From Salpingoeca rosetta (Eukaryota > Protista > Choanoflagellata): a stretch of DNA of 64,000 nucleotides. The position numbers and the translations under genes were made by a program. Where the stretch lies: contig JAWQFM010000022.1 in assembly GCA_033442325.1 (NCBI GenBank), positions 62,001-126,000 of the forward strand, given 5' to 3'. The notes below the pieces were generated by a model. That model was not told the origin of the DNA and made no database searches. It saw nothing but the letters and a program-made list of their open reading frames with translations. Each line of letters starts with the position of its first letter. Positions within the stretch are counted from its first letter, which is position 1. Positions 50,753 through 54,118 of this stretch are shown in pieces.

Positions 50753-53700
50753 ATGGAGAGCACACCAACACACGACGACACTCCTGCTCAGCGTCCAATG
50801 GATGCCGCTGGTGAAGAGGAGCAGCAGCAAGATGTGGAGTGCAACATCTGTTACAACCCTGCCCTTGAGAACCGACGATGCAAGAGCTGCCGTCATCTGT
50901 TCTGTCACACGTGCATTCACGAGTGGATGGAAAAGTCTGCCATCCCAACATGCCCCACGGTGCGCTTGTTTATGTTTATGTTTGTCTATTTGTTTGCGTG
51001 TTTGTTTGTTTACTTGTTTGCGTGTTTGTTTATTTGTTTGCTTGCGTGTTCGTTTGCGTGTTCACTTGGTTGCGTATGTGCCTGTGTGGTTGAGTGCTGT
51101 GTGCCCGAGTGTATGCTGCTGAACGCGCCGTTTCCATTGTTGTCTTCGCACAGACACACACACAGACACACACACGAAACTCACGAGACGTTGCTTGTTG
51201 CCGTCAATGCAACCACAGTGCCGGTGTGACCTCGGCGATACAACGCTGGAGCATGACGAGGAGGTGCAGAACATTGTTGACAAGAGGGAAACATGCTGTG
51301 ACATTTGCGGCACCACAGTGACGTACAAGTCGCTGGCCAAACACAGGCTCCTGTGCATGAACGAGGAGATTCAGTGCCCGTTTGCTGGATGCTCCTTTCA
51401 CGGCACCCGCTCAGCCATGGACATTCACACAGCCTCCTGCTGCCTCGGCGCCAACTACAACCTGGTACGCCGCACGTGCGCTGTTTGTGTGTCTTTGCGT
51501 GAAGTTGTGAGTGAGTCTGTGAGTGTGTTTGTGTGTGTGTGTGTCTTTGTCTGTGTGTGTGTGTGTGTGTCTTTGTCTGTGTCTGTCTCTCTGCCTTTGT
51601 GTCTTTGTGTCTGTCTGTCTTTGTACCTGTGCCTGTGTGTTGCTTGCACAGTCGAGCCACTTGGTTGTGTGTGTGTGTGTGTGTGCGTGTGTGGTCTCAT
51701 GGTGCTCTCTGCAACCTTGCCTGCAGGAGGAAGTGATTCAGTCAGTGTGCAAGCGCGCGGCAGATTCACAGCCCCAGTTTGTCAACGAACACCTGCTTGA
51801 GGACATCTACCAGCCAGACGTGCGTTGATGTGGTTTGTTTGTTTGTGCATGTGTTGAGCGTCGTTTGTTTTGCGTGACGTGTTGTGCTTGTTTGCTTGTT
51901 TTCGTGCTTGGTTGTTCGTGCGTTTGTGGTGTGCGCATGTCTTTGCATGTGCACGTTTTCGTGCTGCTGTACTTGCTGCAGCTTGCACCCACTTGACGTC
52001 ACTCACGCACTTGTGCTGTTTCGTGTTGCCGTATTGCGCGGGTATTGCGCACACCCCAGGACACAAACGACAGCGACACGCTTGTTCACTTTGTGCAGGC
52101 GCACGACACACTTTCGGGCCTTGCCGTCAAATACTGTGCGTTCAATGTGACGCTGTCTGCCCAATCCAGGCTGATCCCCGCACACGCATGCACTACACGT
52201 GTACACACATACACACACATGTCTGCTTTTCGCACGCACGAACATGCACACGCACTTACTCACACACACGCACACACACACACGCACACACACACACACA
52301 CACACACACACACACACACACACACACACACACACACACACACACACACACACACACACACACACACACACACGCGCGCGCGCGCGCGCGTATGTGCTCT
52401 TGCCACCACCGCCAATAACAACAGCGTGCACCCGTGAGGAGATTCTGCGGCTGAACAACCTCACATATGAGGCCCACCTCTTTGCCCGCGCATCCATCAT
52501 CGTGCCCCGCCCAGAGTCGTGGCGCCCAAAGTCAGTAACCACGTGTGTGTGTGTGTGTGTGTGTGTGTGTGTGCGTGTGCGTGTGTGTGTGTGTGTGTGT
52601 GTGGGTTGCAAGGCCATGCACTACTGTGCAATTATGCGCAACTGCCCAGCCACTTGCCTTGCGCAGCCCCCCTCACCATAAAACACGCACGCAAACGCAT
52701 GCACACGTGCGCAGGGAGGAGCCTGAGGTGCCCTTGAGCGTGCTCGTTGCGCTGCGAAAGAAGAAACTCACCCGCCGCGTCGTCACAAAGTGCAGTGTGC
52801 CAGAACCAGAGGTGTGTGTGTATGTTTATGTGTGTGTATGTTTATGTGTGTGTGTGCATGTGTGTGCGTGTGTGTGTGTGTGTTCGTGCTGATTGCTGGG
52901 TGTTGTTGTTATTGTTGTTTCTCGTTTGCACTTCTCGCTTGCTTTTCACGTAGCAGCCAGTCGCTCACTTGCCCAATCACTTCGTTCATTGAATTCGTTT
53001 CCGCGTCAGGCGGTGGCGTACCTGCACCTGACACACTACAAAGCAGACGAAGCGATTCGGCTTATCGAAGGTAGAGACAACGCTTGCGGCGTTTCAATGC
53101 GTGCTTAAGCGCGCCACACACATACACTCACACTCACACGTGCACTCACTCACTCACTCACACTCACACGCGCACTCACTCACACTCACACGCGCACTCA
53201 CTCACCCACCCACCCACTTACTCACTCACACTCACACGCGCACTAACTCACTCACTCACTCACTCACTCACTCACTCACTCACTCACTCACTCACTCACT
53301 CACTCACTCACTCACTCACTCACACTCACACTCACTCACATACGCCCTACTTTCCACCTTGCCTCTATCTCCCCCTCTCACTGCTCGCGACCTGTGCTGG
53401 CTTCTTGCGTGCAACAGAGGATGTGGTGTGGTCGCTACAGCACGGCGAGTCGCAGCCGAAATCGCTCAAGGAGTTCCTGGGCCGCAAACAGCGCGGGCTT
53501 GCGCCGTGCACGGGATGTGACATGCCCATTGCTCAGCACACCCCGCGCCAGCACTGCGCCGCCTGTGGCGCCTTCTTCTGCCACCGCTGCCACCACGGAC
53601 AGGGCCAGTGCAAGCTCACCGTCCCAAAGCTAGCGCTCGGTATGTCTCGATGCCTTGCTTGCTGCTGATGTCATAGTGGTGCTGCTGTGACGATGTTCTT

Positions 53701-54118
53701 GCGTCTGCCAAAGGGCGCCACTGCCTTTGACTTTGGCGCCCATTCCTTCCCCCTCTCTCTACACATGCACGATTGCACACACTCAACTGATGATGTCTGT
53801 GCGTCTTGCATACCAACAACAACAACAACAACAACAACAACAACAACAACAACAACAACAACAACAACAACAACAACAACAACAACAACAACAACAACAA
53901 CAACAACAACAACGACGACAACGACAGGCGTGACAAACCCGGATGCCCGGTACCAGCATGTGCGCGTGTGTCACGGCTGCCACGACCGCCTGTCTCCACC
54001 ATCAACAACAACAGCCCCAGCCGCGCAGTACACTCCCCCGTCCCTTCAGTACCATCAACGCGCCCAACAACAACACCACCACCACCACCACCAAGCCAGC
54101 GCTCCGCTCTGCTCGTGA
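50753..54118 (+). CDS. RING (C3HC4) - TRAF-type Zn fingers - LysM - UBA-like - FYVE-like protein, 9 exons, ~430 aa; putative E3 ubiquitin ligase
   Basis: Exons 50753-50959, 51219-51464, 51727-51819, 52060-52135, 52425-52530, 52715-52811, 53010-53070, 53418-53639, 53928-54118, all GT-AG and in phase. RING CNIC..CRHLFCHTC..CPT|C; LysM HFVQAHDTLSGLAVKY|SCTREEILRLNNL..IIVP; FYVE-like CTGC..RQHCAACGAFFCHRC..RVCHGC. Confidence 0.88.
53240..53322. repeat. (TCAC)n tetranucleotide microsatellite, intronic (also ~36170-36255 and ~60700-60770)
   Basis: Read directly from the sequence. Confidence 0.9.
53813..53913 (+). repeat. (CAA)n tract immediately upstream of the acceptor at 53926-53927, intronic
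   Basis: Pure CAA run followed by GACGACAACGACAG|GCGTG. Confidence 0.9.

What the first reader, a model, noticed from the sequence alone, without database searches (positions are those of the whole stretch)
50753..54118. RING-TRAF Zn-LysM-UBA-like-FYVE-like protein: candidate cytosolic glycan/peptidoglycan-sensing ubiquitin ligase
Seen: nine in-phase exons, invisible in the ORF track as one protein, encode a C3HC4 RING, TRAF/Sina-type Zn fingers (CDIC..HRLLC, CPFAGC..HTASC), a LysM split across an intron (HFVQAHDTLSGLAVKY|SCTREEILRLNNL..IIVP), a UBA-like motif (VPEPE|AVAYLHLTHYKADEAIRLIE|EDVVW) and an 8-Cys FYVE-like finger. There is no signal peptide or TM segment. Established: LysM binds GlcNAc polymers (peptidoglycan, chitin), RING recruits E2 enzymes, UBA-like domains bind ubiquitin, and FYVE fingers target endosomes/phagosomes. 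Inference: in a bacterivorous holozoan this would be a one-chain sensor that ubiquitinates at phagosomes on contact with bacterial wall glycan (xenophagy-like or prey sensing). I know of no characterised protein with this full architecture.
Basis: partly seen in the sequence, partly recalled or inferred. Interest (0 to 1): 0.88.

Follow-up and report, generated by a model that had tools for sequence, protein, structure and literature searches.

The report
Choanoflagellate RING ligase carrying LysM
This is a real nine-exon gene of a choanoflagellate (probably Salpingoeca rosetta) for a soluble ubiquitin ligase that also carries a sugar-binding-type LysM domain; the combination is conserved in choanoflagellates and undescribed, but its proposed role as a sensor of bacterial cell wall is untested.

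Summary
Nine GT-AG exons (50753-54118, + strand) splice into a 432-aa open frame. That protein aligns end to end, with no gaps at any exon junction, with full-length proteins of four other choanoflagellates (30-48% identity).

Domain calls:
- RING: confirmed (Pfam above cut-off).
- Two TRAF-type zinc fingers: confirmed. Fold and profile are closest to the TRAF6/TRAF5 RING-finger unit.
- LysM: confirmed, and only once exons 4 and 5 are joined (25.9 bits against a cut-off of 20.9). It is closest to human LYSMD1.
- UBA-like: supported at fold level only (model of the closest relative).
- FYVE: an eight-cysteine FYVE-type finger, but the PI3P signature RRHHCR reads PRQHCA. Endosome or phagosome targeting through PI3P is therefore not supported.

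The gene is single-copy, and the protein has no signal peptide or membrane segment. Splicing in this organism rests on indirect evidence, because the one read-laying run was lost to a filter.

Function is open. I favour a lectin-type ligase reading cytosol-exposed GlcNAc glycans (about 0.35).

I found no paper on this architecture. The scan noted this same stretch once more (s1-443324), not on other DNA.

The parts
50753..50959 (+). Exon 1 (aa 1-69): poorly conserved acidic N-terminus, then the RING finger up to its seventh ligand. RING ligands are C30, C33, C46, H48, C51, C54, C67 (+C70 in exon 2). The usual E2-contact residues I32, W58 and P68 are present. A possible alternative start, M16, lies at 50798.
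   Evidence: Pfam zf-RING_2 29.7 bits (cut-off 27.3) and zf-C3HC4 27.9 bits (cut-off 21) on the exon alone. Residues read. Six-frame match to P0002 at E 2.6e-10.
51219..51464 (+). Exon 2 (aa 70-151): last RING Cys (C70) and R71, a linker helix, and two TRAF-type C2HC zinc fingers (aa 95-115 at 51294-51356; aa 122-143 at 51375-51440).
   Evidence: Pfam zf-TRAF_2 E 3.8e-4, zf-TRAF E 7.7e-4, Sina_ZnF E 2.7e-3, all below cut-off. Family profile against PDB: TRAF6 RING+finger E 5e-8, FBXO30 TRAF finger E 2.8e-4. Foldseek of the P0002 model: TRAF5/TRAF6 E 6e-7. Six-frame match E 1.3e-19.
51727..51819 (+). Exon 3 (aa 152-182): weakly conserved linker, with low confidence in the model of the relative.
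   Evidence: GT-AG and phase 0. Aligns without gaps to four relatives. pLDDT is below 50 for the matching part of P0002.
52060..52135 (+). Exon 4 (aa 183-207 plus 1 nt): first half of LysM (strand 1 and helix 1, with the DTL motif).
   Evidence: Only the joined exons 4+5 give Pfam LysM at 25.9 bits (cut-off 20.9), covering profile positions 3-43 of 43. Neither half hits alone.
52425..52530 (+). Exon 5 (aa 208-242): second half of LysM (helix 2 and strand 2, ending IIVP). The LysM as a whole is aa 194-235, window 52093-52507 across intron 4.
   Evidence: The relative's LysM aligns over its full length with the human LYSMD1 (SB145) LysM, 2djp, at E 2e-7, and with Thermus P60 LysM, 4uz2, at E 2e-8.
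52715..52811 (+). Exon 6 (aa 243-275): linker and the long first helix of the UBA-like bundle (conserved ALRKxxLTR).
   Evidence: Alignment. Six-frame match E 6.7e-5. Model of P0002:226-300 has pLDDT 88.
53010..53070 (+). Exon 7 (aa 276-295 plus 1 nt): second helix and the start of the third helix of the UBA-like bundle (EAV.YL is invariant in the family). The UBA-like region as a whole is aa 249-304, window 52731-53443 across introns 6 and 7.
   Evidence: VIA-align: TDP2 UBA Z 7.4, rmsd 1.1 over 45; Dcn1 UBA Z 7.4, rmsd 0.7 over 45; most of the top 50 are UBA or CUE domains. The Foldseek list is almost all UBA domains but with E >= 0.49. Best Pfam match is UBA_4 at E 0.18.
53418..53639 (+). 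Exon 8 (aa 296-369 plus 1 nt): end of the UBA-like bundle, a conserved QPKSLKEFL helix, and the first three Cys pairs of the FYVE-type finger. The PI3P-motif site reads PRQHCA (aa 338-343, 53543-53560).
   Evidence: Pfam FYVE E 4.8e-4 on the exon. PDB: WDFY3 FYVE E 1.5e-4, with residue-level alignments to WDFY3, ZFYVE16 and Hrs. phmmer against 1.84 billion representatives: 8 hits; all those traced to a source are choanoflagellates or Tara Oceans metagenome contigs.
53928..54118 (+). Exon 9 (aa 370-432 plus stop): the family-invariant LGVTNPD-type stretch, the last Cys pair of the FYVE-type finger (finger = aa 326-387, 53507-53980), then an unconserved Q/H-rich tail.
   Evidence: Family profile against the ZFYVE27 FYVE domain, 1x4u, E 3.2e-10. 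P0002 Pfam FYVE 27.5 bits (cut-off 27.8); P0004 28.6 bits.
54166..54171 (+). AATAAA, 48 nt after the stop codon: the likely polyadenylation signal. It bounds the gene before the next + strand gene, whose ATG is at 54381.
   Evidence: Read directly from the sequence.

Best explanation
What it is (shown; about 0.93 for this part):
- A real, single-copy, nine-exon gene for a 432-aa soluble protein, conserved across choanoflagellates.
- From the N-terminus it has a C3HC4 RING with two TRAF-type zinc fingers (the same unit that in TRAF6 holds the E2), a LYSMD1-type LysM, a UBA-fold three-helix bundle, and an eight-Cys FYVE-type finger without the PI3P pocket.

How it most likely works (inferred; the confidence value of 0.35 is for this part):
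- It is a lectin-type ubiquitin ligase.
- The LysM, together with the adjoining UBA-like bundle, selects the target by binding a GlcNAc-containing glycan that has become exposed to the cytosol.
- The RING-finger unit brings a charged E2 and ubiquitinates the glycan-bearing protein or its neighbours.
- The UBA-like bundle holds the ubiquitin product or regulates the ligase.
- The FYVE-type finger makes a protein contact or a non-PI3P lipid contact.
- I think the glycan is more likely the cell's own than prey peptidoglycan. The candidate is the GlcNAc2 core of N-glycoproteins on damaged food vacuoles or on retro-translocated proteins. This is the logic of SCF-Fbs ligases and of the role proposed for plant F-box+LysM proteins.
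For: Gene and architecture:
- GT-AG exons and an open frame only after splicing.
- Gap-free collinearity with P0002 (Barroeca monosierra, 47.7%), P0005 (Salpingoeca infusionum), P0008 (a transcript contig) and P0010 (Choanoeca perplexa).
- The same Pfam domains in the relatives.
- Single copy in the 55.4-Mb genome.

Ligase module:
- RING above the Pfam cut-off, with I32, W58, P68 and R71 present (their roles are from established RING-E2 structures).
- TRAF6/TRAF5 RING-finger structures are the best fold and profile matches.

LysM:
- Pfam above cut-off.
- About half of the residues are identical to a chitin-binding bacterial LysM over 32 residues, and there is a full-length match to LYSMD1.

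Link between cytosolic LysM and the ubiquitin system elsewhere:
- Plant and green-algal F-box+LysM, with glycoprotein targets proposed by the authors (PMC2728734).
- ESM Atlas clusters with LysM + UBA_4 in Ascomycota (TM 0.76 to the UBA-like model) and in diatoms and ciliates (scores 0.80-0.82, leads only).
Against: - No binding or activity data of any kind exist for this protein.
- No cytosolic eukaryotic LysM has been shown to bind a glycan.
- The one functional study of the nearest LysM type found protein partners (PMC11289520).
- The Gly of the usual GDTL motif is replaced throughout the family (H, Q, A, T).
- The Atlas matches are below the level at which they count as more than leads.
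- Splicing in this organism is not directly shown.
Confidence: 0.35

Rival explanations
1. The LysM is a protein-binding module, as in the cytosolic LYSMD1/LYSMD2/LMD-2 proteins. On this reading the gene encodes a ligase that regulates maturation of food vacuoles or lysosome-related organelles, for example by acting on a Rab32-type GTPase or its BLOC-3-like exchange factor. No glycan is involved.
For: - The best full-length match to a solved LysM domain is human LYSMD1 (2djp, E 2e-7; also a Foldseek hit).
- LYSMD1/2 and worm LMD-2 bind HPS1/GLO-3 and GDP-locked Rab32, sit on melanosomes and gut granules, and are needed for their biogenesis (PMC11289520).
- A FYVE-type finger and a UBA-fold are common in endosomal adaptor proteins (established knowledge).
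Against: - The paper, as far as I read it, does not map the interaction to the LysM domain itself.
- The genome has its own separate LYSMD-like gene (G000:C4, about 459.6 kb), so this protein is not the LYSMD orthologue.
- Outside the LysM nothing resembles LYSMD1/2.
Confidence: 0.28
2. One reading: a one-chain sensor of prey cell wall. The LysM binds peptidoglycan or chitin from ingested bacteria, the FYVE finger places the protein on phagosomes, and the RING then ubiquitinates there (xenophagy-like or prey sensing).
For: - LysM is the classic peptidoglycan- and chitin-binding fold, and this one keeps strong similarity to a bacterial wall-binding LysM (4uz2).
- The RING-finger unit is of the TRAF6 type used in animal innate immune signalling.
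- The organism eats bacteria (established knowledge of choanoflagellates).
- The family has so far been seen only in choanoflagellates and marine metagenomes.
Against: - The PI3P signature of FYVE is not met, so phagosome targeting by that route is unsupported.
- The protein is cytosolic and would meet wall material only after export or vacuole rupture.
- It is single-copy, with no lineage expansion.
- Similar LysM-ubiquitin-system pairings in plants, and apparently in fungi and diatoms, which do not eat bacteria (PMC2728734), argue for a more general role.
Confidence: 0.17
3. The locus is not one gene. On this reading the nine exons belong to two or more transcripts, or the model is a chance chain of open frames.
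For: - No reads could be laid, so the eight junctions are not directly seen in this organism.
- The full-length protein of this genome was not returned by the protein searches. The tools may withhold records of the window's own genome.
Against: - Four full-length relatives, three of them from assembled transcripts, have the same order of domains with no gap at any junction.
- The LysM profile is complete only across the exon 4/5 junction.
- Fifteen runs hold 0.30-0.43 of the sampled words of 50700-54200. A fully spliced message would give 0.30-0.33.
Confidence: 0.03

Closest known systems
TRAF6 / TRAF5 N-terminal RING plus zinc fingers (PDB 3hcs, 3hct, 7l3l, 5vo0)
   Same: A C3HC4 RING followed directly by TRAF-type C2HC fingers. 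These are the best fold matches (Foldseek E 6e-7 to 6e-4) and a profile match (E 5e-8). In TRAF6 this unit binds Ubc13 (titles of 3hct and 5vo0).
   Different: No coiled coil and no TRAF-C/MATH domain (no Pfam hit in any family member). It is therefore not a TRAF protein. E2 preference is unknown.
LYSMD1 / LYSMD2 / C. elegans LMD-2 (cytosolic LysM proteins; PMC11289520; PDB 2djp)
   Same: Soluble, with a single LysM of the same sequence type (E 2e-7 over the whole domain).
   Different: Those proteins have no RING, zinc fingers, UBA-fold or FYVE finger. This genome has a separate LYSMD-like gene whose LysM intron lies at another position.
Plant and green-algal F-box+LysM proteins (LysMn1; PMC2728734)
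   Same: An intracellular LysM joined to a ubiquitin-ligase module, single-copy and conserved. The authors propose glycoprotein targets.
   Different: The ligase module is an F-box (an SCF adaptor), not a RING. No homology beyond the LysM was tested here, because I could not fetch a plant sequence. These proteins are also uncharacterised.
Small eukaryotic LysM + UBA_4 proteins (ESM Atlas clusters from Ascomycota, diatoms and ciliates)
   Same: A LysM followed by a UBA-like bundle. The fungal cluster is the best structural match to the UBA-like model (TM 0.76 over 63 residues, rmsd 2.0). Feature search with LysM+UBA-like gives the diatom and ciliate clusters (0.80-0.82).
   Different: These are 180-270 aa proteins without RING, TRAF fingers or FYVE. 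The matches are leads, with no alignment or E-value. I know of no characterised function.
FYVE domains (ZFYVE27/protrudin 1x4u, WDFY3 6w9n, Hrs, EEA1)
   Same: The eight-Cys, two-zinc FYVE pattern and spacing. Profile E 3.2e-10 to ZFYVE27; the window's exon 8 gives E 1.5e-4 to WDFY3.
   Different: WxxD is absent, R(R/K)HHCR reads PRQHCA, and RVC is not conserved in the family. There is an extra conserved LGVTNPD-type insert. RING plus FYVE-like ligases such as RFFL/RNF34 and yeast Pib1 come to mind as analogues. That is from memory and was not tested here.
Lectin-type ubiquitin ligases SCF-Fbs1/FBXO2 and FBXO27 (from my own knowledge; not tested here)
   Same: The proposed logic: a cytosolic sugar-binding domain that reads the GlcNAc2 core of N-glycans on misplaced or exposed glycoproteins and couples this to ubiquitination.
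   Different: Those use an FBA sugar-binding domain and an F-box. There is no sequence or fold relation to this protein.

Membership tests
RING-type E3 ligases (C3HC4) | Eight zinc ligands in cross-brace spacing; Pfam RING model above cut-off | tested here: met
   C30, C33, C46, H48, C51, C54, C67, C70. zf-RING_2 29.7 bits (cut-off 27.3) and zf-C3HC4 27.9 bits (cut-off 21).
RING-type E3 ligases (C3HC4) | Ubiquitin-ligase activity with an E2 | not testable with these tools
   Only the usual E2-contact residues can be read (I32, W58, P68, R71). They are mostly kept in the relatives.
TRAF-type zinc finger | C-x2-6-C-x11-12-H-x3-7-C pattern; Pfam zf-TRAF | tested here: inconclusive
   There are two such patterns (aa 95-115, 122-143). 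Pfam is below cut-off (21.4 and 20.6 bits against 27). The profile hits TRAF6 and FBXO30 fingers, and the fold match to TRAF5/6 is at E 6e-7.
TRAF protein family | C-terminal TRAF-C/MATH domain | tested here: not met
   No MATH hit in the window's exons or in P0002, P0005 or P0008.
LysM domain (PF01476) | Profile score above the curated cut-off over the whole domain; beta-alpha-alpha-beta fold | tested here: met
   25.9 bits (cut-off 20.9), profile positions 3-43 of 43, on the spliced exon 4/5 peptide. The relatives score 22.4 and 25.7 bits. The P0002 model has E168-172, H179-185, H190-196 and E210-214 at pLDDT 75-80.
LysM domain (PF01476) | Binding of GlcNAc-containing glycans | not testable with these tools
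The Gly of GDTL is replaced in all five family members; the significance of this is unknown.
UBA / UBA-like domains | Compact three-helix bundle of about 45 residues | tested here: met
   This was tested on a model of the closest relative (P0002:226-300; best model pLDDT 88, the other four 67-71). VIA-align gives Z 7.4 to the TDP2 and Dcn1 UBA domains at rmsd 1.1 and 0.7 over 45 residues. The hit lists are dominated by UBA and CUE domains.
UBA / UBA-like domains | Match to a UBA sequence family; MGF/Y loop | tested here: not met
   No Pfam hit for the window's peptide. The best in the family is UBA_4 at E 0.18. The family profile finds no UBA domain in the PDB. The loop reads SVPEPE or similar.
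UBA / UBA-like domains | Ubiquitin binding | not tested
   No valid test result was obtained here; see Tried and rejected.
FYVE zinc finger (PF01363) | Eight Cys in four CxxC pairs with FYVE spacing; profile match | tested here: met
   CTGC, C..C, C..C, C..C in aa 326-387. P0004 scores 28.6 bits and P0002 27.5 bits against a cut-off of 27.8. The family profile hits ZFYVE27 at E 3.2e-10.
FYVE zinc finger (PF01363) | PI3P-binding signature: WxxD, R(R/K)HHCR, RVC | tested here: not met
   Aligned to WDFY3, ZFYVE16 and Hrs, the site reads PRQHCA. The family has only the second R invariant, and there is no WxxD. RVC is found in this species only.
LYSMD1/2 orthologues | Small protein with an N-terminal LysM and no other domain; one orthologue per genome | tested here: not met
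   This is a multi-domain protein, and a separate LYSMD-like gene exists at G000:C4:459569.

The most novel reading that the evidence does not exclude
The cytosolic LysM plus UBA-like pair is an old eukaryotic cassette that reads GlcNAc glycans for the ubiquitin system. It stands alone in fungi, diatoms and ciliates, and the LysM is joined to an F-box in plants. In choanoflagellates the cassette became wired to a TRAF6-type RING. That would give the closest relatives of animals a one-chain cytosolic sensor of bacterial peptidoglycan or chitin, signalling through ubiquitin chains and independent of NOD-type and PGRP-type receptors.
Probability: 0.13. Interest if true: 0.85.

Novelty: new variant of a known kind. 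Interest (0 to 1): 0.55.

Why it matters
Every domain here is known, but I found no description or characterisation of this combination: a TRAF6-type RING unit, a cytosolic LysM, a UBA-fold and an atypical FYVE finger.

- What cytosolic LysM domains of eukaryotes bind is an open question. Only one study gives them a function, and it is not a glycan function.
- This protein ties such a LysM directly to a ligase module, in an organism that can be cultured, fed defined bacteria and edited.
- A few binding and knockout experiments could therefore decide between three roles: glycan sensing, glycoprotein quality control, and vesicle trafficking.
- If the LysM reads bacterial wall, it would be a new kind of cytosolic pattern receptor next to the animal stem.
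- If it reads host glycans or proteins, it still gives a handle on the plant F-box+LysM proteins and the fungal LysM+UBA proteins, which are equally unexplained.

Tried and rejected
**Read laying**
- Loci L002-L005 cover that place; they were fetched automatically and were not used.

**Ubiquitin binding**
- Complex prediction of the UBA-like region with this genome's own ubiquitin gave 'no answer' (score 0.02). This is no evidence either way.

**Searches that added nothing**
- The word-index searches with P0002, with the family alignment and with the LysM-UBA region found only P0002, P0005 and P0010. They say nothing about wider distribution.
- The Atlas feature search with full-length P0002 gave no usable hit. 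The Atlas fold search with the full model gave only TRAF, RNF151 and ZTRAF1-like N-terminal matches.
- Pfam on single exons cannot see the LysM.
- A six-frame LysM search of the genome misses this locus for the same reason.
- Pfam on neighbouring open frames gave no functional context.

**UBA-like region by sequence**
- Pfam on the window's peptide gave nothing.
- The family profile against the PDB gave nothing.
- The call therefore rests on the fold alone.

**Idea rejected**
- I asked whether the LysM intron is shared with the genome's LYSMD-like gene. It is not: it lies three codons away and in another phase.

- I did not type the 432-aa spliced protein into any tool. Whole-protein searches, exact look-up of its transcripts, and folding of the window's own protein were therefore not done. 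The closest relative, P0002 (47.7% identical), stood in for it.

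
Full report
**Gene model**

The region 50753-54118 (+ strand) holds nine open stretches flanked by GT...AG. Joined, they give 1299 nt, which is 432 codons plus a stop.
- Exon coordinates are 50753-50959, 51219-51464, 51727-51819, 52060-52135, 52425-52530, 52715-52811, 53010-53070, 53418-53639 and 53928-54118.
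- The introns are 184-347 nt long and full of microsatellites.
- Five introns have in-frame stops. The other three have lengths that are not multiples of three, so the frame exists only after splicing.
- CDS GC is 0.60, and GC at third codon positions is 0.71.
- AATAAA lies 48 nt after the stop, and the next + strand gene starts at 54381.
- M1 is the first start codon in its open frame and has A at -3 and G at +4. The relatives, however, begin near M16, so the true start is uncertain.

**Relatives**

A phmmer search of exon 8 against 1.84 billion representative proteins gave only eight hits. Six of these belong to the family; together with P0010, found later, the relatives are:

| Protein | Source | Length | Identity to the spliced window protein |
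|---|---|---|---|
| P0002 | Barroeca monosierra | 402 aa | 47.7% |
| P0005 | Salpingoeca infusionum, complete transcript ORF | 391 aa | 33.9% |
| P0008 | a 1258-nt transcript-like Logan contig | 386 aa | 36.0% |
| P0010 | Choanoeca perplexa (found later) | 384 aa | not computed |
| P0001, P0004 | Choanoeca flexa | fragments | – |
| P0003/P0009 | a genomic open frame on Tara Oceans metagenome contigs | 203 aa | 53% over exon 8 |

- The spliced window protein aligns with the four full-length proteins over its whole length.
- There is no gap at any of the eight junctions. The only gaps are in the N-terminal extension and the C-terminal tail.
- This conservation is the main evidence that the nine exons are one gene.
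- Searching the window's own genome (55.4 Mb, 68 contigs) with P0002 finds only this locus, exon by exon. The gene is therefore single-copy.
- Another agent's note names the genome Salpingoeca rosetta.

**Expression**

I could not lay reads. Indirect support comes from the run index.
- Three runs hold 0.78-0.95 of the sampled 31-mers of 50700-54200. That is DNA-like.
- Fifteen runs from five studies hold 0.30-0.43.
- A fully spliced message would hold 0.30-0.33.
- The run kinds are only guessed by the index, so this is a hint and not proof.

**RING and TRAF-type fingers**
- Exon 1 alone passes the Pfam RING cut-offs. The eight ligands and the usual E2-contact residues (I32, W58, P68) and R71 are present.
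- Exon 2 has two C2HC patterns. They hit zf-TRAF_2, zf-TRAF and Sina_ZnF below cut-off.
- The family profile matches the TRAF6 RING+finger (E 5e-8) and the FBXO30 TRAF finger.
- The AlphaFold model of P0002 (mean pLDDT 64, with domains at 70-85) matches TRAF5/TRAF6 RING-finger structures best (Foldseek E 6e-7; model).
- No MATH domain exists in any member. This is a TRAF6-like E2 module, not a TRAF protein.

**LysM**
- Neither half hits Pfam alone.
- The peptide across the exon 4/5 junction scores 25.9 bits against a cut-off of 20.9, over profile positions 3-43 of 43.
- It is also independent support for that splice.
- The LysM of P0002 aligns over its full length with the human LYSMD1 (SB145) LysM (2djp, E 2e-7). 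About half of its residues are identical, over 32 residues, to the chitin-binding LysM of Thermus P60 (4uz2).

**UBA-like region**
- No Pfam family matches the window's peptide. The best match in the family is UBA_4 at E 0.18. The family profile finds no solved UBA domain.
- A model of P0002:226-300 is three helices. Its best model has pLDDT 88, and the other four have 67-71.
- That model superposes on the TDP2 UBA (Z 7.4, rmsd 1.1 over 45) and the Dcn1 UBA (Z 7.4, rmsd 0.7 over 45). Most of the top 50 matches are UBA, UBA-like or CUE domains.
- Foldseek gives the same families with weak E-values.
- The fold call is supported, for the relative. Ubiquitin binding is not shown.
- The best structural match in the ESM Atlas is a fungal cluster annotated LysM + UBA_4 (TM 0.76).
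- A feature search with the LysM-UBA region returns diatom and ciliate LysM + UBA_4 clusters (0.80-0.82).
- These Atlas matches are leads only. They agree with a second first-stage note on this same stretch (s1-443324).

**FYVE-type finger**
- Eight Cys in four pairs lie at aa 326-387.
- The family profile matches the ZFYVE27 FYVE domain (E 3.2e-10).
- In Pfam FYVE, P0004 passes the cut-off and P0002 misses it by 0.3 bits.
- In residue-level alignments with WDFY3, ZFYVE16 and Hrs, the PI3P motif RRHHCR / RKHHCR is replaced by PRQHCA.
- Across the family only one Arg of that motif is invariant. WxxD is missing, and RVC occurs only in this species.
- The fold is FYVE-type, but the defining lipid pocket is not met.
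- A family-specific, nearly invariant LGVTNPD-type stretch sits between the third and fourth Cys pairs. It is unexplained.

**Function**

Shown: a soluble protein (maximum hydrophobicity 0.57) with an E2-recruiting module and three possible recognition modules.

Inferred: it is a ligase whose C-terminal half chooses the place or the target. Three readings compete.

1. *Lectin-type ligase for cytosol-exposed GlcNAc glycans.*
   - LysM is a glycan-binding fold everywhere it has been tested on glycans.
   - Plants and green algae pair an intracellular LysM with an F-box, and the authors propose glycoprotein targets (PMC2728734).
   - The possible LysM-UBA cassette in non-bacterivores points to an endogenous ligand.
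2. *Protein-binding LysM.*
   - LYSMD1/2 and LMD-2 are the nearest LysM type.
   - They bind HPS1/GLO-3 and GDP-Rab32 and promote the biogenesis of lysosome-related organelles. The paper does not mention peptidoglycan or chitin (PMC11289520).

I put these at about 0.35, 0.28 and 0.17. About 0.03 goes to a wrong gene model, and the rest to something else.

The genome also has a separate LYSMD-like gene with its own split LysM. Its intron lies at a different position. The protein studied here is therefore not simply the LYSMD orthologue.

**Novelty**

Full-text searches gave nothing on this architecture. The term sets were: LysM with choanoflagellate and RING; LysM with Salpingoeca; LysM domain, RING finger, E3 ubiquitin ligase and peptidoglycan together; and LysM with UBA-like.

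All the domains are known, so I class this as a new variant of a known kind (RING ligases).

**Limits**
- Folding and several searches used the closest relative rather than the window's own protein, because the spliced sequence has no reference.
- The wide HMMER search used only exon 8, so 'confined to choanoflagellates' holds only for the C-terminal module at phmmer sensitivity.

Noticed in passing
L007:1480-1890 (G000:C4, about 459.5-460.0 kb): A second intron-split LysM in the same genome. One exon ends ...SLAIKYDVP, and the next begins VDHILHMNRLFATDSIHLRKTLLIP. This is LYSMD1/2-like. Its intron lies three codons later and in another phase than in the RING-LysM gene, so the two do not share the intron.
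   Followed up: partly
window 54381-55226 (+): The next gene starts 263 nt after the stop codon. Its long first open frame is very acidic and rich in Ser and Lys (runs of D, E, S, K) and has no Pfam match.
   Followed up: partly
window 38034-39452 (+) and 56749-58320 (+): Open frames with an Anoctamin match (E 6e-14) and a weak DDHD match (E 1e-4). These are unrelated neighbouring genes and give no context for the ligase.
   Followed up: partly
window 52260-52385, 52545-52600, 53100-53340, 53814-53913: Introns 4, 5, 7 and 8 are largely microsatellites: (CA)n, (GT)n, (TCAC)n-like, and about 33 copies of CAA. The CAA run blocks read laying.
   Followed up: no
L008-L011 (Tara Oceans and other ENA metagenome contigs, about 1.2 kb): An uncultured marine relative carries the same C-terminal module (53% identical over exon 8) as a genomic open frame that runs into an intron. 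The index lists it in 33 blocks of the collection, so the family is common in ocean samples.
   Followed up: partly
window 53928-53960 (aa 370-380) and the matching columns of P0001, P0002, P0004, P0005, P0008 and P0010: A nearly invariant LGVTNP[DE] stretch inside the FYVE-type finger. It is among the best-conserved stretches in the protein, and I know of no counterpart in canonical FYVE domains.
   Followed up: no
window 50753 versus 50798: There are two possible starts. M1 has the better context (A at -3, G at +4). The relatives start near M16 (MD..), and residues 1-25 are not conserved.
   Followed up: no
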